A stretch of 64,000 nucleotides of DNA from Mytilus californianus (GCF_021869535.1 NW_026262667.1:8618001-8682000); one strand, 5' to 3'; counted from the stretch's first letter, positions 14,548 to 34,339 are shown. The notes: generated by a model not told the origin, from the sequence alone. Program-made: numbers and translations.

Positions 14548-16577
14548 TTATGTCTGTGGTTGATAAGTATGTTGTTGTTGCTGTTGTTGCTGTTGCTGTT
14601 GAATAATCTGTTGTGACACAGGTATCTGTATACGTTTTTGCATTTCATTTTGATGGCTCATATTAAGTGGAGCATTGCCTGCATAAGCTGACGACTGGAT
14701 AGGAACCATAGTAGGGGGTCCACCTTCTATCTGAGCTATTACACCACCTTGTGCAGTGGTCGGTAGATTCTCTAAAAATCTTAAAGTCTCCATGTATCCT
14801 AATAATGTGGAAAATGTCTGAGACTGTTGTCTATTATCATTTGTCTGCACAACAGTTGGTCGATTGGTCTGGTCACGGTTCACTTGGTATTCAGCTGGTA
14901 TGACACCATTTGTTCTAATCATATCTAAATTAACATCTTTGTTTATAATTTGTTGTTGGGCAGGTTGCTGTTGGTTTGCCAGGTACATTGTGCCGTGTGT
15001 TTGCACCTGATGTTGTCGATACTCATTAGTTTGAGCATTTGGATCCATACCTTGCTGTTGATGACGTATGGCACCCCCACTAACATCTATGTATCTTTGA
15101 TCCGTTAACTGCATCTGCGATCCAATTGAAGTAACCTGCATACTTTGCATTTGAGCAGGTATATGTTGTTGCTGATGTATATTCTGCATATTTGACATAT
15201 TAATCACAGACTGAGCATTATTTTCATACAATTGAATAGGAACGGCTAATTCACGGCCGTCAGCTGTTTGCATGGTATGATAAATGCTGTTAATGTTTGG
15301 TTGTGATGTGACCAGCACTGTTGGATCTTCCCTCGGAATATTAAGAGCTTGAAACACTGCAGCACTAACTTTTTCATACTCCTTCAATTTTTCTTTCCTT
15401 TCTCCTCTAGGTGCTCTAGGAGGTTTGTTAGCATTGTCACCACTATGAGAGGATCTCAAATGACGAGTCAGGTGATCCTTGCGTCCAAATCTTTGTGGAC
15501 AGTATTGACATAAGAAGTCTTTTTTCTTTGTATGAGTAATCATGTGTCTTCTCACATCTTTCCTTGTATAAAACTTCTTTCCACATTCAGGGCAAGCATG
15601 TATTTTTTCTGTACAGTTTTTCACTGAACGGGCACCACTGTGTACTTTCAAATGATACAATAATTCTTCCCTAGTCTCATGCTGCTTGTGACAAATTCCA
15701 CACTCTGTCGACCTTCCTGCATCGGCATCGTGAAATGCCTTGTGAGTTCTGTAGGAAAAGTTGTAAGAATATTCCTTTCCACACTCTTCACACACCCATC
15801 TTTTCTTATTTGGATCATGAGTAATCATGTGATTTTTCAGGTGATCTTTACGATTGAATGACTTGTCACAATAAGGACACTTGTGATGACGGGGACAGGT
15901 ATGAATCAAACGATGTCTTTCTAATTTAAATTTGGACATAAATCCTTTAGAACATTCAGCTACTTCACAAATAAACGGTTTGACTCCAGTATGGTCAGAT
16001 ACATGTATTACAAACAATGCTTCTTTTGTAAATGTTTCTGTGCAATGGGGACATTGCATTGGTTCACGTCTAGATGCCCTAGGTCCACGAGGAATCCTTC
16101 CCTTTTTACGACCACGTCTACGTGGCATAGGTTCAGGATAATCTTCGTCTGCTCCCAATATTTCATCTAACATTTCTGTAGTTGTCTTCTCCTCATCTTC
16201 CTCATCGTCCATGACTTGTTCCATGTACGCTTTATCTTCTGGTTCCCCATCTAGAACCTGATCATCAGGTGTCTCCTCAACTTGTAGGGGTGGAGGAATA
16301 TCCAAGGCTGGTCTTTTATTTTTGGGAGGTCTCCCTCTCCTTCTTGGTGGAAGAGTCTGTGAAGGATCGACAACCTTAGCTTTTAACATTCTAGACTTCT
16401 CCAGTCTAGCTCTCCAAGTTTTGGATGGTTTGATATACTTTCTTGGCCTTCCTTTCCTGGGTCTGCCCCTTAATCTACGACTGTCAGGTGGAAGTCCTGG
16501 ACACAGGTGGGCTTCTAGATCAGCAAAAGCACTGAAACCATCATAGCAAACTGAGCACACCCACTTCGCAGCCACAC
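14548..16577 (-). CDS. PLAG1: PR/SET-PLAG zinc-finger gene, coding exon 6: C2HC-like finger, AT-hooks, seven PLAG-type C2H2 fingers, Q-rich C-terminus
   Basis: Acceptor ttgtattatag at 16579-16578, phase 1. Finger array ...KFKLERH...RKDHLKNH..THDPNK...FYTRKDVRRHM..H..KDFLCQYC.QRFGRKDHLTRH is the PLAG1/PLAGL2 signature. AT-hooks RGRPRK, GRPRK, RGRPPK. The symbol denotes a PLAG-family pro-ortholog. Confidence 0.93.
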
Positions 16578-17499
16578 CTATAATACAAAATTTTATTCTC
16601 TTAACAAAGATAACAAATTTTACAACAATACTTATATCTTATACATTTTAAATTACTGGTAGTATACTTGTGATTAACTTAACTGTGGTCTATATCTACA
16701 ATGTAAATGGAACAAGGAGAGCTTTCCATATATGCAACAATTGGAGTTCATCCATTTTAAAGTATGTCTCTCGAGGTTTAATCTTCATTCTTATTCAAAT
16801 TCATGTACATGTAAAATTTTGACAAACGCAGTCTTTAAATGATAAAGTTAAGATATACCAGTTAAATGAATTAAAGACCAAAACTTTAAGACATGATTCA
16901 TATAGTGGAATAACAATAATCAGAGTCTTATCTACGAAGTTCACATGATAATATTGCCAAGTGTTTTTTTTTAATTTACTAAGGAAGTATAAATATTCAT
17001 GATTTTTTTCTGTGGGTCTTTTAATTTTGTTCGCATATAACTATATATCCAAGTTAGGTTGCAATGCCAAATTTAGTCTTTGATTTAACATCTGGCAACC
17101 ACTTTTCTACACAAATGTAAGTCTATTTCCAGTCACTTTTTGTCATTGACCTTTGATGTGGTGACCTCAAAATCAATAGGAAATTTCATCTCATTATATG
17201 TGACCACATGTCCAAGTAAACTTAAAATCCCATCTGTAGAAATTGATTTTGCACCCAGAAACCACTTGTCATTTCAGTCTTATTTTTTAGTTACTATGAC
17301 ATTGACATTGAAAAGTGTCCACAAAATCAATATGTATCTTCCACTCATTATATGTGACCATATATCCAAGTAAGACTGCAATCCCATTTGTAGTATTTGA
17401 TTAATGGTTGTAATCTGATATAAAGTATTGGATTTAGGGTCCTGAAACAAAATCAACTGGCAAACTGATGAACAGTAATTCTCTATGGTTGTCATTTGT

Positions 17500-17712
17500 T
17501 GCTGTAAATCATATTTGTTTTGTACATAAAGCAGACTGTTTTCTCGTTTGAATTGTTTTACATTGGTCATTTCGGGGCCTTTTATAGCGGACTATGCCGT
17601 ATAGGTTTTGTACATTCTTGAAGGCTCTATGGTGACCAAAAGTTGTTAACTTCTGTGTCATTTGGTCTCTGGTGGAGAGTTGTCTCATTGGCAATCATAC
17701 CACATCTTCTTA
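17500..17712 (-). mobile_element. Abundant interspersed repeat (retroelement 3'-tail family; related copies at ~21730-21985, 34040-34170, 38640-38828, 42650-43060, 52843-53235, 56380-56690)
   Basis: Shared motif aagatgtggtatg(a)ttgccaatgagacaactctcca...ctataggtca...gccttcaaca...gctataaaaggcccc in all copies, either orientation. Confidence 0.7.
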
Positions 17713-17798
17713 TTTTCATATAGACTTAAGGACTGGTGGACGGATCAAAAACTATATACCCAGCACTACTAACTACGAAGAGATTACTATTGACTCAC

Positions 17799-17922
17799 CT
17801 GTTGCTTCTTGATCAGGTGTCTCTGTAATGATAGGTTCTGGATCAGGCAGAAGTGGTTTGTCCATCATCTCAGCATACTCAGCAGAATACCAAACTTTTA
17901 TCTCAGTGTTAGAAGGAATTGG
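17799..17922 (-). CDS. PLAG1: PR/SET-PLAG gene, coding exon 5 (end of PR domain)
   Basis: cacag|CCA...ACAG|gtgagt, 124 nt, phase 0->1. PIPSNTEIKVWYSAEYAEMMDKPLL resembles PRDM15 ELRVWYAAFYAKKMDKPML. Confidence 0.9.
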
Positions 17923-18187
17923 CTGTGTCAAAGAAGAATTAAATATTCATTACTTAAAATACTGAAATGTAATTTCACCTATCTTTTCTATCCAAGAGAA
18001 ATATTCCCAAAGGTTCAACTATAAATCTTATTACTTGTGTCCTGGAACATCATAACATATAGTTTTTTTTTAAATTTCAATTTGTTAAACACCTGTGTAT
18101 GGAAAAGACACTTGAATAAAATGAATTTTAAATCTGTGAATGGCCATAGTTCTGTTTAAATTGTTAAATATAGATTCTAGCACTGCA

Positions 18188-19014
18188 CAGGGTTTCTGCT
18201 GGCAGTCGCCATTTTTGCATTTTTCAGAAAAAATTAAATTGTGGCAATTAAAAATCATGATTGGCGAAATAATTTCATGAAAGAAATATAATGTTCGACT
18301 TCGTCCATCTTCTTAATTTTGTTTCAGGTTTCTCTGACTTTTTCCCTAATCAGACAATTCTCAGATTTCACCTCGAACTTGAATCGATTTTGTCAGAAAA
18401 TCAATAATCAGCTGATTGCATTTGATAGCAATCAGAAACAATGGCCTTGTTAATAAAGGTGTTAATTTTATTGTTTAATGAAAATGTGTGATATATTGGC
18501 GTCACATGTCACCTGAAGGAGTGTTTTTACAACTTTGATAACAATGACCATTTTGAGGTGGGTACTTCACCATTGTTTTAGCGGCGCACCTGTTTTACAT
18601 CTCAACTTTTACTTTTTACGATGGTTCGGAAGTGAAAATAACTGTTTTAAAGAAAGTGTTCAAAAGTAACACAAATCTCTAATTTTATTTGTTGTCCTTT
18701 AACTAGACAGGAAGTACCCAATAAACTGATTGAAGATAAATCTCGAAGTCAAATTTTACAGTATCTTTTTTAAGTTCAAGAAAATTTTGTCCTGATTGAG
18801 TGTTCATTTATTACAATGTGGGATATATAAAAGATTTGTAGAATTACAATAAATGAGACAACTGTACAATGCTGCAATCTGCATTTTTGGTTAGAAATAA
18901 GGAAAACAATTTCGAATTAAAAAAATACTGTGTTTGTCAATGTGAGTTGGCGAAAAAAATATTGTTTTGGCGAAAGAGCTGGTGAAAAAAGAAATTGACC
19001 CAGGGGAAACCCTG
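18188..19014. mobile_element. hAT-like MITE
   Basis: TIRs CAGGGTTTC(T/C)(G/C)CTGG at 18188 and, inverted, ending 19014. Flanks cactgca / ctctgca form an imperfect TSD. Confidence 0.55.
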
Positions 19015-20214
19015 CTCTGCATCAATATGGGAGAGTTGCTGGAGTTTTTTGGTGTGCACAAAGTTTTTACACAGAGTTTGGAGCAAGGATCCGGAATTTT
19101 TTTCACACAATTTCGGTCATTTTGAGATGACTTATAAGTTGGTGCCCTTTTTCAAATTGTCGATATCACATTAGAATCATAGCATCAATGAACTTATATG
19201 ACTGTTTCATCGCATTTACTTCGTGAATTTTCTTACCATTTTTCTAAACACGTTCAAGAACAGTTTAGGGAAGGCAACAGTTTAAAATTGAAATGATTTT
19301 AATGACTCAAAATAGTTAATTTCTCAGACATTGCTAACGTTTCTTTCGATTTTGAAGACGAAATTAAAACCGGAAGTTTTGCGACAATACTCAAGTATGA
19401 GTAATTCGGGATTCATTTCCGGGATTCGTTTTGTTTATCAAATTGACAGGAAATCACCAGCTTTTTAATTTTATGACCTTTGAAAGTGTTTGTATACAAC
19501 AGAATGATAAAAGTTGCACTCGATTATTTAGCATGAACTTATTTTGCATTTTACTATTAAGTGTCAAATCTGCTGAAGACAATTTCACACATGCGTATTT
19601 CATAGTAAATAAAGCACATGTGTTACTTGTGAAAAATTACTTTTTTCTCCGTAAATTAAATTAAGGTTCAATTGTAAATCAGAATTATTGATTGTCTTTG
19701 CTGAAAAGTAATTAAGTAATGAATACTTAAAGGAATTTTAATTTCTTTATGATATTAGTTCAGAGCTTGTGATCAATGTCAGGTGTGAATTAAAAACACA
19801 GGTAAAAAGTGATTAGCGATCATTAGCCAATATTTCCCGGAGGCATTTATATAGTTATTAGGAGGGCCCTCAGGATTATCGAACTATACTAGAGTGGCAG
19901 TTTTATTACAGGAAAGGGATTATAAAACAAAAACAAGTGCAAAATGGAGATTAAGAAACCCGATCTCAATGAAATGACCGAAATTATTTCTGTAAAAAAA
20001 TTAAATTTGTCCTAAATTCCAATTTTTCGATTCGGACAAATAGCTTTCAGTTCAGGTCATGACTGGCAAATATGACCGTTTCCGGACCTTTGGTTTGGAG
20101 TATGAGAATCAGAACTCTCCGTGTGTAGTGTAAGCTCACAAGGTCCATCAGGGCCAGGTGAACTAAAAAATATTTCAGTATATGATTTCAGTAACAAATA
20201 TTGCATGTACCAAC

Positions 20215-20367
20215 CTTTATAGATACAAAGAAAATATGCTGGTCTTGTTGATAGACAACAACATTTTGTTCGGCTGTATTTCTGGCCGGTCTAACAAACA
20301 TCATCCAGTTACATTTATCTTCATCAGAGATATCAATATTATCAACATAGTCGTCATCCTTAAATAT
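20215..20367 (-). CDS. PLAG1: PR/SET-PLAG gene, coding exon 4 (PR core)
   Basis: ttccttgcag|ATA...AAG|gttggt, 153 nt, phase 0->0. [51 protein letters not shown] contains the PRDM10/15-type NWMMFVRPA motif. Confidence 0.9.
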
Positions 20368-20600
20368 CTGCAAGGAAAAAGAGATACCAATATTATCAAC
20401 ATAGTCGTCATCCTTAAAAATATCTGTAAGGAAAAAGAGATATCAATATTATCAACATAGTTGTCATCCTTAAAAATATCTGTAAGGAAAAAGAGATATC
20501 AATATTATCAACATAGTCATCATCCTTAAATATCTGCAATTCAAAGATATCAATATTATCAACATAGTAATCTCCCTTAAATATCTGCAATTAAAAAAAT
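20368..20600 (-). repeat. Tandem array of splice acceptor + first ~40 nt of the PR exon (4 extra copies: 51, 54, 56, 56 bp)
   Basis: CAG|ATATTT(TT)AAGG...TATGTTGATAATATTG(A/G)TATC recurs with exon-like starts at 20584, 20533, 20479, 20423 and 20367. Confidence 0.9.
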
Positions 20601-21436
20601 AAACTGTTAACACAGAGATATGTCTCGCCTTTTTGTAATTTTGATAATGCAAATGTTGAAATTAAAATAGCAATACTTTAACATGTACATTGTAAGTTAT
20701 CCAAATATTCAAAGTCAATGAACCTTGACTGAAGGTACATGGCTAAACAATCTCCATGAAAATGAGATGTGCCAATGCTAATAAAACTGCATACCAAATA
20801 CCATTGACTTATCATAAGTCATTCCCTTTAAACAAACCTAAACACAAACATTAACTTATAAGCTATGTCATTGTATGTAAAAGTTTCAAAGTCAATGAAC
20901 CATGATGAGGGGGTGGGGCTATATAATCTCCATGGAAACGAGAATTGCAAATGCCAATAAATTTGCATACTAAATATCATTGACTTTTAACATTAGCGGT
21001 TCATCTTAAACTGATCTAATCACAAACTTATACATAAACTAAGCAAAAGTTTCAAAGTCAATAGACCATGACTGAGGGGCGGGCCTAATATTCTCCATGG
21101 AAATGAGATGTGCTAATTATTATACAACTGCATACCAATTAACATTGGCCTACCACTAATGGCTCCCCTTGAACTGACCTAATCACAAACTAATACATGT
21201 AAACTAAGCAAACCTTTCAAAGTCATTAGTCCATGACTGAGGGGGTGGGGCCAAATAATCTCCATGGATATGAGATGTGCCAATGCTAATACAACTGAAT
21301 ACCTAATATCATTGACCAACCACTAATGGTTCACCATAAACTAGACCTAATCACAAACTAATACATTGTTGACGCTGCCGCCAGAAACAGCATACCTATG
21401 TCTCGCTTTTTGACTCCGTCAAGGAGAGACAAAAAT
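20598..21436 (+). mobile_element. Helentron/HINE-like element with four ~167-bp units and 3' hairpin
   Basis: tgtctcgc near both ends. 3' hairpin tgtctc-gcttt-ttgac-tcc-gtcaa-gga-gagaca (21399-21431) followed by an A-run. Same subfamily as 7123-8065. Confidence 0.8.
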
Positions 21437-22426
21437 GGTTTTAATTTAAACTGTGAAATTGAATTGATATCAACAGCATTTACAAAACCTTTATCCTTAT
21501 AAAATACCTGCATGAAATAAATTATACTTGTTAATGAAATTAACACTTTATAAAACATGTGCATCTGAATCAGGAACGCTCAAACTCGAACATTTGAAAG
21601 CCAAAGATATGAAAATATGCTGCAACCATGAGCTATATGACCAAAAAGAATTCATGTGTTTGGATGGTGAAACTTGTTGTTTCAAACAAACCATCACTAC
21701 AATTTAGGCTGTAATTGATCATGAGTGATTGTCGTTTGCTGCTGTTTAACATATTATTTTTTTTGTTTATTGTTTTGTACATAAATCAGGCTGTTAGTTT
21801 TCTTGTTTGAAATATTTTACATAAATTTGTCATTTCGAGCCTTTTATACATGTAGTGTGTGTGGTATGGGTTTTGCTCATTCTTGAAGGCTGTATGGTGA
21901 CCTATAGTTGCTTACTTCTACACCATTTGGTCTCTGGTGGAGAGTTGTCTCATTGGCAATCATACAACATCATCTTATTTTAAATGCAATCCTGAACCAA
22001 GTCACCTCTGAGTTTAATGTTATAAATGTTTGTTGTTTGTTGCTATTTACCTTTGCTACTCATTGACTATGAAGAACATATTACTGATGATGAAAAACAA
22101 TTCATTTATATTGGACATATTTTAAGGCATGGCCATCTTAAAAGATCAAAAGATTGAAGTTTTGTGTCATGATTTTGAAATATTTTAAACTATTGCAATC
22201 ATTTACCGTATATACATGTATTGTAGTTATTTTTTTTATCTTTTAAGTCTGTTATAACAATATTATATGGTTGTGTACATAAATTTGTAGAAGCAAACAC
22301 AATTTCAATATAAAACTAAAAACAAAAGAGAATGTAAGCACCATTGTTTCAACAACTTGAACCCAGTTGACAAAATGAATATGCATAAATATTAATGTAC
22401 ACAAAATGTAAGTTTTAAAAGCAAAC

Positions 22427-23463
22427 CTTAATCTCGTAGGTATAATCTAGTTCTTTTTCTTCTGTTTCCTTTTCCTTTCCCCCTGTCTGTTCTGTAACTT
22501 CTGTGGCATGAGGTTCATCAGTGGTGTTTTGCGGCCGCTGGTCTGATTCACTGGTAAGTTCTGTAGGCAAAGGTTCAGTTGAGGCAAGAACAGCATTTTG
22601 CTGTAATGACTCAGTAGTATTATGCTGCATGTGTTCAGTTGAAGGCAAAGTAGTATTTTCCAGTGAAGAAAGAGACATACTACTTGGTGGTAAGGGTTGT
22701 TGATCAGAAGTCATGTTCTGAAGTTCCTGTGTGGCTACAGCTATTTGATGCTCTAAAAGCTGTGTTTCTGTTAATCCTTCACTAACATAACTATCTGCTG
22801 GTGTTATACCAGCCTCAATTGAAGCTTGCAGAGTTAGGTCTTGTGACAATTGTGGTTGTTCAAACTGACTGACAGCTGTATCCCCAGACAATGTTGTCAC
22901 TATATCTAATGCCTGCTGTGGAGTATAGCCACCAGATAAATGTTGTAGCCCTGCATCACCGTAAGGACCAGCATGTAAACAGTTCTGGATGTTCATTATC
23001 TGTGTAGCCTTGTCAATGTTCGGGTGTTGTAATGTAAAAGTATTGTTGTTCTGTTGTGTATATTGCTGAGATACTAACTGTTGTTGCATATTAGCAGTAT
23101 CAAACCCATCAATGTTCTGTAACAGTAAATGTCCTTCGTCATTGTGTGGGATCATTTCAGAACTGTTAATATGTTGTTGTTGTTGCTGGGTTTCAATGCT
23201 TAATTGTCTTTGAATGTCAGCTTCTTGTTGCTGAGAATTTTGAGGAATATTTTGTGAAATTTGGTTAGTTATTTCAGGCTCAATAAGTTGAACACTAGGT
23301 GTTCTTTCCTCAGTGGTTTCCTTAGAAATTGGTGATTTTTCATCTCTACTAACATCTGTTGTGTCTTTCTTTGGAGTATATTTTTCTGTTGATTTAACTT
23401 GTCCATATAGAGGTCCAAACTGTGATCTGCATTGTATTATTCTTTTAGCAAAGATACCATAAG
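22427..23463 (-). CDS. PLAG1: PR/SET-PLAG gene, coding exon 3 (PR N-terminal half + ~315-aa Q/T/S/E-rich insert + YTYEIK)
   Basis: tttgtttttcag|CT TAT GGT...ATT AAG|gtttgc, 1037 nt, phase 1->0. YGIFAKRIIQCRSQFGPLYG is the PR/SET start motif (GVFA...FGP). Confidence 0.88.
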
Positions 23464-23894
23464 CTGAAAAACAAAAGTATTGAAATGCAAAATAAATCAA
23501 AACTAATGTTCAGAGTGTTGATCAATATGTATCAATGCAGTCAGATCTATGTATGAACTGGTCTATTTACCAGATATTCTCTGTATTTGTAACACAAACC
23601 ACAAACAATTTACAGAACTAATTATCAAACAGTGACCTGTAGTTGCTAGCATCTACATTGTTTGGTCTCTGGTAGACAGATCTTGTCTCACTGGCAATCC
23701 TACCACAACATTTATATAATTAATTTTTATAAAGATGACAAATGTATTTATTTCCAGTTGGTTCCTAGTTACTGCACACCTACAGTGAAATCATTCAATA
23801 TTAGACAAAATCTTAACTTAATATTGTTAATAATTTAACAGTTAACATACTTTTTGGTGTATCTTTTCATACACAATTACAATGATATACTCAC

Positions 23895-24047
23895 ATGTTT
23901 TACCATCATCTGTCTTCACCTGCTTAATTACAAGACCAGCTGGGCATGTTAGTCGTGCTCTTGAGGGTATTGCATTATCAAAAACTTGTGTAAAACCACC
24001 ATGTTTCTTGCATATTCCTGGTACACTCTTGCCACAGTCATGGCACC
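23895..24047 (-). CDS. PLAG1: PR/SET-PLAG gene, coding exon 2 (PRDM zinc knuckle)
   Basis: ttttgaatag|GG TGC...ACA T|gtgagt, 153 nt, phase 1->1. (W)CHDCGKSVPGICKKHG...PSRARLTCP matches the WCxxC-x6-CxxHG...RAR knuckle of PRDM4/9/10/15. Confidence 0.9.
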
Positions 24048-24599
24048 CTATTCAAAAAGGAAATTAGTATAAAAACCTTCTCTTTACCTTGTCTCATTGT
24101 TACTGCATTAATCCTTAAACATGGAACTTTAAAAGGATAGAGAAGTTTAGTCAGATTAATCATATACTAACATTCAAGACTAAAACAGTTCTTAAACTAT
24201 AGATGATACATTGTTTTAATGTTTGGTAACCATACTTATTTTTTAATTACGAAAAATTTAAACAATTTTTTTGTCATGCTGTACATAGAATAGCTGAATA
24301 AACATGATAAAGGTATCAGTAGATTAAACAATACCCAGTTTCTTACAATTAATTTTTTTTAAATAAAATGTATATGGATTGTTTTTTTATATGTGATGAT
24401 TTTATGTTTCAGGTCACATTATAGCAATACATTGCTTACAATTACAATTTTCATTGTTCCTCTCATTTCTAAATCATTTTGCTGAAATTTGCCTGTTGCA
24501 TTCCATTCAAGGTCTAAAGCATACATAATACAGTCAAGGCATTCAAAAGATTTTGAGGCATGTATTTAAAGTAATAACCTACTTATGGGAAGATTGTAT

Positions 24600-25540
24600 C
24601 ATGATAAAATAAAAGTGACGCTACCCAAATTTGAACTTGATCTGAGTTTTGTGGTAATAAGCATTGTGTGTAAGTCTCATAACATTAGGTTGAGGCTAAC
24701 TTAAGTAGAGAACAGAAACTAAAAATTCAGCAATTTTTCTATTTGTAAACACACATAACTCTAGAACGGTTGTGTATAAGTTTTATAACATTTGGTTGAG
24801 ACAAACTAAAGTAAGGGAACGGAAACAAAAAAATTCAGCAATTTTTATGTTTATAAAGAGACATAACTCAAGAATGGTAAAAGTGTTGCCACCAAATGTC
24901 GTACTTAATCTGTATTATGTAGTAATAAGCATTGTGTATAAGTTTCATAACATTTGGTTGAGGCAAACTAAAGTTAGAAAAAGGAAACAAAAATTTTGTA
25001 CTTGATCTTAGTTTTGTGGTAATGAATATTGTGTATAGGTTTCATAATGTTTGGTTGGGGCAAACTTAAGTTACAGAATGGAAACTAAAAATTTGGCAAA
25101 CTTTCATTTTATAAAGGGGCATAACTCAATAATGGTTAAAGTGACACTACCCAAATTCAACGTGATCTGTGTTTTATCAGTGGAAGTCAAAATTAAACAT
25201 TGCATTGTATAAAGCATTGATTGTAGTTGATTCAACTATAATCATGGACAAAGGAAGATAAATCCAATTTTAAAAATTACTTGATATTTAGAAGAAAATA
25301 AAAATTTTGCAATTTTTCCATTTCTAAAGGGGCATAACTCTAGAACGGTTAAAGTGACGCCACCAAAATTCAAACTTGATCTGTGTTTTGTGGTAATAAG
25401 CATTGTGTATAAGTTTCACAACATTTGGTTGAGGCAAACTAAAATAAGAGAACGGAAACAAAAAATTCAGCAATTTTTCCATTTGAAAAGGGGCATAACT
25501 CTAGAACGGTAAAAGTGACGCTACGGCGGGGGCATAAAAA
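24600..25540 (+). mobile_element. Helentron/HINE-like element with ~160-bp tandem units
   Basis: Repeated gggcataactctagaacggt(t/a)aaagtgacg...aagcattgtgtataagtttcataacatttggttgaggcaaactaa, ending cggcgggggcataaaaa. Confidence 0.7.
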
Positions 25541-25634
25541 TATATGGTAAATTTGTGGTTAGGCTGTTTTAAATATATCCTACTTTCTCCCTATACAGAT
25601 ACATGTGGTGCTCCAGATTTTATTTTTTACTTAC

Positions 25635-25662
25635 ACAACTCGTCTTGCTTGTGGGATGACAT
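25635..25662 (-). CDS. PLAG1: PR/SET-PLAG gene, coding exon 1 (MSSHKQDEL); exon spans 25691-25635
   Basis: cattttag acceptor and TTGT|gtaagt donor. In-frame TAA upstream of the ATG. The phase-1 T joins GG to give W of WCHDC. The full CDS sums to 3525 nt = 1174 aa + stop. Confidence 0.8.
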
Positions 25663-33737: not shown

Positions 33738-33836
33738 GAGAAAGAAATGTCATATCAATGTTTAGAAGATAATGGCTATGATAGAAGTAGATGTGAAATG
33801 TATTTTGAAAATTACAGAAACTGTTCCAAGTTTTGG
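33738..33836 (+). CDS. CHCHD7: CHCHD7 coding exon 2 (CX9C core), followed by a GC donor
   Basis: ttttttgcattatag|GAG...TTT TGG|gcaagt. EKEMSYQCLEDNGYDRSRCEMYFENYRNCSKFW aligns to human [34 protein letters not shown]. Confidence 0.92.
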
Positions 33837-34339
33837 GCAAGTATTTAATCAAATTAGTTTTGTGTAAGTTACCTAACAGTTACATGTATGCAAAATTTAG
33901 ATATGACTATAAATATTTGGCTTATTCAGTCTTACATACAGTTGCTTTTCTTTATCAGGCGTCACCAAAATCTAACATGTTATATCATGAGAGATTTCTT
34001 AAGAATGATTGCACTGCATTACTAATGTAAAATAAGGAGATGTGGTATGATTACAAATGAGACAACTGAGTCCAAATGATGTGGATTTAAGCAACTATAG
34101 GTCATCATACAGCCTTCAACAATGGGCAAAAGCCATACTGTAAAGTCAACTATAAAAGGCCCCAACATTTATTTGAACCATCATTAGGATGGCAAGATTC
34201 ATTGATCTTAGAACACTATATATCATCAGTTATATTAAATGAACCAACTCAACAAATGAGGGTTGTGTATTGATATGCTTTTGTTGAAATGAAATCCATT
34301 GAAACAATGAGTTGAAGCAAATTAAGTTTTGTGTTGCTT

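What the first reader, a model, noticed from the sequence alone, without database searches (positions are those of the whole stretch)
14548..25662. PLAG zinc-finger array fused to a PRDM10/15-type zinc knuckle + PR/SET domain
Seen in sequence: six exons splice in phase into one 1174-aa ORF running zinc knuckle (WCHDC..CKKHG..SRAR), PR/SET (GIFAK..FGP...NWMMFVRPA...KVWYSAEY), AT-hooks, seven fingers matching PLAG1 finger-for-finger, and a Q-rich tail. Established: vertebrate PLAG1/PLAGL1/PLAGL2 have these seven fingers and an activation domain but no PR domain. Inference: this is a PRDM-like ancestral form of PLAG, and vertebrate PLAGs would be PR-less derivatives. PR-bearing invertebrate PLAG-like proteins may already be reported, so novelty needs a literature check.
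Basis: partly seen in the sequence, partly recalled or inferred. Interest (0 to 1): 0.8.

Follow-up and report, generated by a model that had tools for sequence, protein, structure and literature searches.

The report
Mussel PLAG gene keeps PR domain
This is a real six-exon mussel gene for a transcription factor that joins a PRDM-type PR/SET domain to the seven PLAG zinc fingers. The same layout occurs across bilaterian animals, including shark, turtle and bird PLAGL1, so the PR-less mammalian PLAG proteins look like trimmed descendants. The gene itself is already predicted in public databases.

Summary
Observation confirmed. On the minus strand, six exons with canonical GT-AG borders join in frame into a 1174-aa ORF. 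It carries a zinc knuckle, a PR/SET domain split by a ~315-aa low-complexity loop, a solo finger, three AT-hook cores, seven PLAG-type fingers and a Q-rich tail. Spliced contigs from public runs join E3-E4-E5 directly and E4-E5-E6 by length and depth arithmetic. RefSeq already predicts a 1174-aa protein of the same architecture in Mytilus trossulus (86-99% identical per exon).

Interpretation largely supported, with one correction. The finger array lies inside the PLAG clade, not with PRDM10/15, and the recognition helices of fingers 3, 6 and 7 are identical to mammalian PLAG1. The N-terminal module is closest to PRDM10/15, with PRDM4 close behind.

The architecture is not a mollusc novelty. 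Predicted proteins carry it in bivalves, gastropods, an annelid, insects, echinoderms, a hemichordate, amphioxus, lamprey, sharks, turtles, a crocodilian and birds. The vertebrate PR-bearing genes group with mammalian PLAGL1, so the statement that vertebrate PLAGs lack PR holds for mammals only. PR was lost at least twice.

I found no paper that states this; the main Prdm evolution study never mentions PLAG. The gene is ordinary as a database entry, and the evolutionary link is moderately interesting.

The parts
25635..25662 (-). Coding exon 1: ATG plus 9 codons (MSSHKQDEL) and the first base of the Trp codon of the knuckle. The donor is GTAAG.
   Evidence: An in-frame stop lies two codons upstream. 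P0001 has the same start.
23895..24047 (-). Exon 2: zinc knuckle (W)CHDCGKSVPGICKKHG, then the SRAR/LTCP stretch that leads into the PR domain.
   Evidence: W10, A40 and P45 are invariant or nearly so in 28 N-terminal modules. The Cys/His columns are invariant in 12 non-bivalve PR-PLAGs. Pfam PF18445 reaches only 13.5 bits.
22427..23463 (-). Exon 3: first strands of the PR domain (YGIFAK..FGPLYGQ, 23399-23461). A ~315-aa Q/S/T-rich insertion follows (22454-23398), then the start of the next PR strand (ELDYTYEIK).
   Evidence: AF2 gives pLDDT below 50 over most of residues 111-387 and 86-98 on the flanks. The RNA-seq contig X5 record 16 holds 1067 nt upstream of E4, which equals the whole of E3 plus 30 nt of E2.
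20215..20367 (-). Exon 4: PR core ([51 protein letters not shown]).
   Evidence: Pfam PRDM2_PR 63.7 bits on this exon's ORF alone. Spliced contigs X1 record 1 and X5 record 16 cover 20215-20367 and run straight into E5.
17799..17922 (-). Exon 5: end of the PR domain (EIKVWYSAEYAEMM) and a linker.
   Evidence: Contigs X1 record 1, X5 record 16 and X2 record 8 cover it.
14548..16577 (-). Exon 6, with the stop codon. It holds the solo finger WVCSVC..H.C (16501-16563) and AT-hook cores RGRPRKGRPRK (16435-16476) and RRGRPPK (16312-16344). The seven PLAG-type C2H2 fingers lie at 15445-16059, the FSTLLGYM motif at 14791-14814 and the Q-rich tail at 14572-14613.

Best explanation
One protein-coding gene of a Mytilus mussel. 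It is the orthologue of a pan-bilaterian 'PR-PLAG' transcription factor and already stands in RefSeq as an uncharacterized protein.

Shown:
- Six exons encode, in order, a zinc knuckle, a PR/SET fold, a solo C2H2-like finger, AT-hook cores, seven PLAG-type fingers and a Q-rich tail.
- The PR exons and the finger exon are spliced into one mRNA.
- The finger array belongs to the PLAG clade.
- The PR module belongs with other PR-PLAG proteins and is nearest to PRDM10/15.

Inferred mechanism:
- The protein binds DNA through its fingers at a PLAG-like bipartite G-rich site (core GRGGC plus a G-cluster). The recognition helices of fingers 3, 6 and 7, which make those contacts in PLAG1, are identical.
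- The mollusc-specific AT-hooks would add minor-groove contacts.
- The Q-rich C-terminus with the conserved FSTLLGYM motif would act as the activation region.
- The PR domain more likely serves as a protein-interaction or cofactor module than as an active methyltransferase. In bivalves it tolerates a long disordered loop.

Evolutionary reading: the ancestral bilaterian PLAG gene carried knuckle+PR. The PLAG1/PLAGL2 ancestor lost it, and so, separately, did the PLAGL1 line that leads to mammals.
For: Gene model:
- Borders are GT-AG, phases fit, and the product is 1174 aa.
- RefSeq P0001 is also 1174 aa and 86-99% identical per exon.

Transcripts:
- X1 record 1 and X5 record 16 (an RNA-seq library) join E4 directly to E5. 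They carry 350 and 1067 nt upstream of E4.
- X2 record 8 (645 nt, depth 4.6) has 65 nt, then E5, then 453 nt. The depth of 2.18 in bin 16480-16679 equals 4.6 x 95/200, so the same contig runs on into E6.
- Raw RNA reads over the exons lie with the first mate on +, as expected for a minus-strand RNA in a dUTP library.
- A 3879-nt intronless contig of a related bivalve carries one 1240-aa ORF. It aligns to residues 3-1160 of the model across all five junctions.

Fingers:
- 50-53% gapless identity to PLAG1, PLAGL1 and PLAGL2.
- The PLAG clade has 100/100 support and Mytilus sits in a mollusc clade at 98/98.
- The helices RKDHLKN, TRKDVRR and RKDHLTR are identical to mammalian PLAG1.
- PMC12764072 states that fingers 6 and 7 bind the GRGGC core and finger 3 the G-cluster.

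PR module:
- Pfam 104 bits.
- AF2 folds the two halves at pLDDT 86-98, and Foldseek's top matches are the PRDM1, PRDM10 and PRDM4 PR domains.
- The nearest relatives after the PR-PLAG orthologues are PRDM10/15.

Distribution and loss:
- PR-PLAG proteins are predicted in many phyla.
- The PR-module tree agrees with the finger tree.
- An AU test rejects a single clade of all PR-less vertebrate PLAGs, p = 0.006.
- The terminal motifs LPRFHQAFQ and LPHFHHAF[KR] track the paralogues.
- Amphibian PLAGL1-like keeps the solo finger that follows the PR domain.
Against: - The E5-E6 junction was not printed in the joints table, which intronic repeats swamped. It rests on length and depth arithmetic for one contig, in a run whose RNA status is a guess.
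- No single Mytilus read or contig was seen to span E1 to E6.
- PR-less isoforms from an internal promoter are not excluded.
- In the N-terminal tree the split between PR-PLAG and PRDM10/15 has weak support (67/64), and the locust sequence falls on the other side.
- PRDM4 scores close to PRDM10.
- All orthologues used are computer-predicted proteins.
- DNA-binding specificity, activation and PR function are inferred, not tested.
- Bivalves lack the terminal LPRFHQAFQ motif.
- The AU group was named after the tree had been seen.
Confidence: 0.88

Rival explanations
1. There are two neighbouring genes, a PR-only gene (E1-E5) and a PLAG-like finger gene (E6), merged by prediction.
For: - The annotation of another bivalve, Mactra antiquata, splits the locus into a 430-aa 'prdm9' (P0238) and an 819-aa 'plagl1' (P0022) on the same contig.
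- E6 alone is a 675-aa ORF with its own in-frame start codon.
- The E5-E6 joint was not listed explicitly.
Against: - E5 ends in phase 1 at a GT donor and E6 begins after an AG in the matching phase.
- X2 record 8 continues 453 nt beyond E5 with matching depth on E6.
- An intronless 3879-nt bivalve contig holds PR and fingers in one ORF.
- More than 30 predicted orthologues from many phyla have both parts.
Confidence: 0.04
2. The gene is simply the mussel PRDM10/15 orthologue, and its fingers only look PLAG-like.
For: - Some databases name orthologues 'PRDM10-like' (P0008, P0140).
- The N-terminal module is collinear with PRDM10: knuckle, PR, then a solo finger W.C..C.
- PRDM10 is the best solved-structure match.
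Against: - The fingers are only 24-33% identical to PRDM10/15, and 3 of 28 contact residues are shared.
- The finger tree separates them by a branch of 3.4 changes per site with 100/100 support.
- A PRDM10 clade (100/99) contains a mollusc PRDM10 (Haliotis P0236) separate from the mollusc PR-PLAGs.
- The PLAG C-terminal motifs are present.
Confidence: 0.03
3. A PR module was captured by exon shuffling onto a PR-less PLAG gene, in molluscs or several times independently, so PR-less PLAG is the ancestral form.
For: - Several insect PLAG1-like models and vertebrate PLAG1 and PLAGL2 lack PR.
- Support for monophyly of the PR-PLAG PR domains is weak at the base (67/64).
Against: - PR-bearing forms occur in lophotrochozoans, insects (the locust, and a partial PR in a mayfly model), ambulacrarians, amphioxus, lamprey and gnathostomes.
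- The PR tree mirrors the finger tree clade by clade.
- The solo finger after the PR domain is conserved, and persists in an amphibian PR-less model.
- PR-less vertebrate PLAGs are not one clade.
Confidence: 0.05

Closest known systems
PLAG family (PLAG1, PLAGL1/ZAC1, PLAGL2) as described in mammals
   Same: - Seven collinear C2H2 fingers at about 50% identity.
- Identical recognition helices in fingers 3, 6 and 7, and 3 of 4 contact residues in finger 2.
- The C-terminal motif FS.LL.(F/Y)(L/M).
- An activation-type low-complexity C-terminus.
- A CHCHD7-like gene lies upstream on the opposite strand, as at human PLAG1. The human arrangement is from memory, and the mussel exon was only partly checked.
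   Different: - It carries an N-terminal zinc knuckle, a PR/SET domain, a solo finger and AT-hooks, which the mammalian proteins lack.
- It lacks the terminal LPRFHQAFQ motif.
- Fingers 1, 4 and 5 have diverged.
PR-bearing 'PLAGL1' or 'PLAG1-like' predicted proteins of birds, turtles, crocodilians, sharks, amphioxus, echinoderms, a hemichordate, an annelid and a locust (RefSeq models)
   Same: The same domain order: knuckle, PR, solo finger, then seven PLAG fingers. The PR and finger phylogenies agree with each other.
   Different: - Bivalves have a 200-400-aa disordered insertion inside the PR domain.
- Molluscs have three AT-hook cores.
- Bivalves have lost the terminal motif.
PRDM10/PRDM15 subfamily of PR-domain zinc-finger proteins
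   Same: The nearest PR sequence, with the same N-terminal layout (WC.(D/E)C..C..HG knuckle, PR, then a W.C..C...F..L..H solo finger) followed by a C2H2 array.
   Different: - The finger array is unrelated beyond generic C2H2 similarity.
- Molluscs have a separate PRDM10 orthologue.
- PRDM4 is almost as close in PR sequence.

Membership tests
PLAG zinc-finger family | Seven collinear C2H2 fingers with PLAG spacing | tested here: met
   Gapless alignments of about 209 aa at 50-53% identity to PLAG1, PLAGL1 and PLAGL2. Seven fingers were found by pattern.
PLAG zinc-finger family | Finger array falls inside the PLAG clade rather than with other C2H2 arrays | tested here: met
   The PLAG-type clade has 100/100 support against PRDM10. 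Mytilus sits in a mollusc clade at 98/98.
PLAG zinc-finger family | DNA-contact helices of fingers 3, 6 and 7 (G-cluster and GRGGC core readers) | tested here: met
   RKDHLKN, TRKDVRR and RKDHLTR are identical to mammalian PLAG1. The roles of these fingers are taken from PMC12764072.
PLAG zinc-finger family | Binding to GRGGC(N7)RGGK and transcriptional activation | not testable with these tools
   Needs EMSA or DAP-seq and reporter assays.
PLAG zinc-finger family | Conserved C-terminal motifs (FS.LL.FL and terminal LPRFHQAFQ) | tested here: inconclusive
   FSTLLGYM is present. The terminal motif is absent in all bivalves but present in other PR-PLAGs, PLAG1 and PLAGL2.
PRDM family (PR domain + zinc fingers) | PR/SET fold | tested here: met
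   Pfam PRDM2_PR 104 bits and SET 28.7 bits. AF2 gives pLDDT 86-98 for both halves. Foldseek's top hits are the PRDM1, PRDM10 and PRDM4 PR domains at E of about 1e-7.
PRDM family (PR domain + zinc fingers) | C2H2 array downstream of the PR domain in the same polypeptide | tested here: met
   Gene model and spliced contigs.
PRDM family (PR domain + zinc fingers) | Zinc knuckle before the PR domain (present in a subset: PRDM4, 9, 10, 11, 15) | tested here: inconclusive
   The C-x2-C...C-x2-H pattern is conserved and aligned with PRDM10/15. Pfam PF18445 scores only 13.5 bits against a cut-off of 25.8.
PRDM family (PR domain + zinc fingers) | Lysine methyltransferase activity | not testable with these tools
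   Needs an enzyme assay. I did not evaluate the catalytic residues.
PRDM10/15 subfamily | PR module nearest to PRDM10/15 | tested here: met
   After the PR-PLAG orthologues, the remaining hits are nearly all named PRDM10/15. Against solved structures PRDM10 scores 141 bits, PRDM4 131 and PRDM11 110. The margin is modest.
PRDM10/15 subfamily | Member of the PRDM10/15 clade, with orthologous fingers | tested here: not met
   The PRDM10 clade (100/99) excludes it and holds a separate mollusc PRDM10. Fingers are 24-33% identical and 3 of 28 contact residues are shared.

The most novel reading that the evidence does not exclude
The PLAG family would be an unrecognised ancestral bilaterian PRDM subfamily, sister or close to PRDM10/15.

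- Its PR domain survives in invertebrates and in the PLAGL1 orthologues of sharks and sauropsids.
- PR was lost independently in the PLAG1/PLAGL2 ancestor and on the line to mammalian PLAGL1.
- The mammalian PLAG oncogenes and tumour suppressor would then be natural 'PR-minus' forms. That invites comparison with the PR-plus/PR-minus isoform pairs of PRDM2, MECOM and PRDM16.

The evolutionary claim itself looks likely from the trees. The probability given is for it being both true and not yet described in the literature.
Probability: 0.45. Interest if true: 0.65.

Novelty: new member of a known kind. Interest (0 to 1): 0.5.

Why it matters
PLAG1, PLAGL1 and PLAGL2 are much-studied growth regulators, oncogenes and an imprinted tumour suppressor. 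They are described as plain seven-finger factors. If their ancestor, and living bird, reptile and shark PLAGL1, carries a PRDM10/15-like PR domain, three things follow.
- The PLAG family joins the PRDM superfamily.
- The count of ancestral bilaterian Prdm subfamilies (11 in PMC4760075) gains one, or the Prdm10/15 subfamily gets split.
- A testable question opens: what did the PR module do, and what changed when it was lost, in PLAGL1 on the line to mammals.

For the mussel genome itself the gene is an ordinary, already predicted orthologue.

Tried and rejected
- **Literature.** Ten full-text searches found no paper that links PLAG proteins to a PR domain. The terms combined PLAG, PLAGL1 or plagx with PR domain, PRDM, SET domain, evolution or PRDM10/15. 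The Prdm evolution paper PMC4760075 has no occurrence of 'PLAG', and its supplements are not held. So I could not see whether these genes were filed under Prdm10/15 or as orphans.
- **Reads.** The exon joints were not in the 15 joints printed, and I had to use the contig-piece table and depth arithmetic instead.
- **Outgroups for a PR tree.** The third homologue search, meant to bring in PRDM4, 9, 11 and 1, returned only PR-PLAG and PRDM10/15 proteins. A rooted PR tree over all subfamilies was therefore not made.
- **Misassigned sequences.** Aromia P0248, Batillaria P0239 and Holotrichia P0250 were first taken for PR-PLAGs. Their fingers are not PLAG-type, and Batillaria groups with Haliotis PRDM10.
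- **Finger 6 of mammalian PLAGL1.** The apparent mismatch is probably a register slip of my pattern, not a real difference.


Full report
**1. The observation**

The region holds a minus-strand gene.
- tblastn of the RefSeq protein P0001 against the window gave five blocks.
- Reading the junctions fixed six coding exons: 25662..25635, 24047..23895, 23463..22427, 20367..20215, 17922..17799 and 16577..14548.
- Every intron is GT..AG and the phases are compatible. The product is 3525 nt = 1174 aa with a single terminal stop.
- An in-frame stop lies two codons before the ATG.

Pfam finds PRDM2_PR on three separate exon ORFs. On the joined N-terminus it scores 104 bits, with SET at 28.7 bits. The knuckle model PF18445 stays below its threshold at 13.5 bits.

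**2. Is it one transcript?**

Its joint table was filled by intronic repeats, but the contig pieces are informative.
- X1 record 1 (603 nt) covers E4 exactly (20367-20215) and runs directly into E5 (17922-17823). It holds 350 nt before E4.
- X5 record 16 (1325 nt, from a library on record as RNA-seq) does the same, with 1067 nt before E4. That equals the whole 1037-nt E3 plus 30 nt of E2, so the low-complexity insert is in the mRNA.
- X2 record 8 (645 nt, depth 4.6) has 65 nt, then E5, then 453 nt more. The depth of 2.18 in bin 16480-16679 equals 4.6 x 95/200, so this contig continues into E6.
- Raw RNA reads over the exon bins lie with the first mate on the + strand. That fits a minus-strand RNA in a standard stranded library.

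A related bivalve gives independent support. A 3879-nt Logan contig (L001) holds one uninterrupted 1240-aa ORF with knuckle, PR and fingers. It aligns to residues 3-1160 of the Mytilus model in one block, across all five Mytilus junctions.

E3-E4-E5 is therefore shown. E5-E6 is strongly indicated but was not printed as a joint.

**3. What the protein is**

*Database matches.* The finger exon finds a 1174-aa RefSeq protein of Mytilus trossulus at 99% identity, so the window comes from a Mytilus species. Other bivalve models with PR and fingers follow, and then insect and vertebrate PLAG1, PLAGL1 and PLAGL2.

*Fingers.*
- The seven-finger block aligns without gaps at 50-53% identity to PLAG1, PLAGL1, PLAGL2 and to PR-bearing PLAG-like proteins. 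It is only 24-33% identical to PRDM10/15.
- In a maximum-likelihood tree of 56 finger arrays the PLAG-type arrays form a 100/100 clade, separated from PRDM10 by a long branch. Mytilus sits in a mollusc clade at 98/98.
- The recognition helices of finger 3 (RKDHLKN), finger 6 (TRKDVRR) and finger 7 (RKDHLTR) are identical to mammalian PLAG1, and finger 2 shares 3 of 4 contact positions. Fingers 1, 4 and 5 differ. A PRDM10 shares 3 of 28 positions.
- According to PMC12764072, PLAG1 binds GRGGC plus an RGGK G-cluster seven bases away. Fingers 6 and 7 read the core and finger 3 reads the G-cluster. Conserved specificity is a reasonable inference, not a result.

*Other PLAG signatures.* The FS.LL.(F/Y)(L/M) motif is present as FSTLLGYM. 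The terminal LPRFHQAFQ motif is missing in all bivalves.

**4. The N-terminal module**

*Nearest relatives.*
- The alligator orthologue's knuckle+PR used as query finds PR-PLAG proteins first (184-394 bits). After them the hits are nearly all named PRDM10 or PRDM15, at about 120-135 bits.
- A second search, restricted to shorter proteins, again returned only PR-PLAG and PRDM10/15 proteins.
- Against solved structures, a PR-PLAG profile scores PRDM10 at 141 bits, PRDM4 at 131, PRDM11 at 110, and PRDM9 and PRDM1 at about 102 (single sequence).
- 'PRDM10/15-type' is therefore the best label, by a modest margin.

*Shared layout.* PRDM10/15 and PR-PLAG are collinear: a WC.(D/E)C..C..HG knuckle, the PR domain, then a solo finger W.C..C...F..L..H.

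*Tree of 40 N-terminal modules.*
- Mytilus groups with the bivalve PR-PLAGs (95/88).
- The deuterostome PR-PLAGs plus Owenia form a clade (95/96).
- A PRDM10 clade (100/99) contains a gastropod PRDM10, so molluscs have both genes.
- The basal split between PR-PLAG and PRDM10/15 is weak (67/64), and the long-branched locust sequence falls on the other side.

*Fold.* AlphaFold2 with this alignment folds residues 1-95 and 400-480 of the mussel protein at pLDDT 86-98. The segment between them stays mostly below 50. Foldseek then finds the PRDM1, PRDM10 and PRDM4 PR domains. The PR fold is predicted intact, with a disordered loop inserted after the FGP strand.

*The insertion is bivalve-wide.* The FGP-to-NWM spacing is 208-417 aa in bivalves, against 41-44 aa in the vertebrates and the locust.

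**5. Distribution and history**

Predicted PR-bearing PLAG-type proteins occur in many groups:
- bivalves, gastropods and the annelid Owenia;
- a locust, and a mayfly model with a partial PR;
- crinoids, starfish, a sea urchin and a hemichordate;
- amphioxus and lamprey (truncated model);
- sharks, turtles, a crocodilian and birds.

In the finger tree the chordates form a clade (97/91). Amphioxus and lamprey PR-PLAG branch first. Then come [PLAG1 + PLAGL2] (99/97) and [shark PR-PLAG + (amphibian PLAGL1-like, mammalian PLAGL1, sauropsid PR-bearing 'PLAGL1')] (87/79, inner node 94/91).

Three further observations bear on this.
- The sauropsid, amphibian and mammalian PLAGL1 proteins share the end LPHFHHAF[KR]. 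PLAG1, PLAGL2, the sharks and the invertebrate deuterostomes share LPRFHQ(A/V)FQ.
- The amphibian PLAGL1-like models lack PR but keep the solo finger that follows it.
- An AU test rejects a tree in which all PR-less vertebrate PLAGs form one clade (p = 0.006). I named that group after seeing the tree.

The simplest history has the bilaterian PLAG ancestor carrying knuckle+PR. PR was then lost in the PLAG1/PLAGL2 ancestor and, separately, in PLAGL1 on the way to mammals. It corrects the premise that vertebrate PLAGs lack PR.

**6. Mechanism**

*Shown:* the domain order, the single mRNA, and the family placement of each part.

*Inferred:*
- sequence-specific binding to a PLAG-like G-rich bipartite site through fingers 3, 6 and 7;
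- extra minor-groove contacts from three GRP AT-hook cores, which are conserved in bivalves and in Nucella only;
- activation through the Q-rich C-terminus;
- the PR domain acting as an interaction module. Activity was not assessed.

**7. Novelty**

- The protein is already in RefSeq and GenBank under names such as 'uncharacterized', 'PLAG1' and 'PRDM10-like'.
- Ten literature searches found no paper that notes a PR domain in any PLAG protein.
- The comprehensive Prdm evolution study (PMC4760075) defines 14 subfamilies and never mentions PLAG.
- The library lacks most subscription journals, so this absence is weak evidence.
- I rate the gene a new member of a known kind. The family-level link may be unreported.

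Noticed in passing
window 22454-23398 (minus strand, inside exon 3): A ~315-aa Q/S/T-rich insertion sits inside the PR domain, between the FGP strand and the next strand. It is bivalve-wide: the spacing is 208 aa in Solemya and up to 417 aa in a scallop, against 41-44 aa elsewhere. AF2 predicts it to be disordered. An RNA-seq contig retains it in the mRNA.
   Followed up: yes
window 20414-20652 (minus strand, intron upstream of exon 4): Tandem copies of the exon-4 acceptor plus its first codons (IFKD(D/G)DYVDNIDI...) lie in the intron. The spliced contigs X1 record 1 and X5 record 16 use the innermost acceptor, at 20367.
   Followed up: partly
window 33738-33845 (+ strand): An exon encodes a twin CX9C piece (..CLEDNGYDRSRCEMYFENYRNCSKFW..) that looks like CHCHD7. 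It lies divergent from and upstream of the PLAG-like gene. Pfam CHCH, COX6B and CMC4 hits are all below their cut-offs. The likeness to human CHCHD7, and the head-to-head PLAG1-CHCHD7 arrangement in human, are from my memory.
   Followed up: partly
window 17480-17880, 20480-21480, 21680-22080: Intronic repeats have very high depth in all four runs, up to tens of thousands in summed contig depth. The stretch at 20480-21480 is strongly strand-biased in the stranded RNA run. These are probably abundant transposon or SINE families that are transcribed elsewhere in the genome.
   Followed up: no
P0022 and P0238 (Mactra antiquata, same contig): The published annotation of another bivalve splits the orthologous locus into a PR-only 'prdm9' and a finger-only 'plagl1'. 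This is probably a split gene model.
   Followed up: no
P0108, P0118 (newt PLAGL1-like): These amphibian models start just after the PR domain. They keep the post-PR solo finger and linker, which is either a PR-less isoform or an incomplete model.
   Followed up: partly
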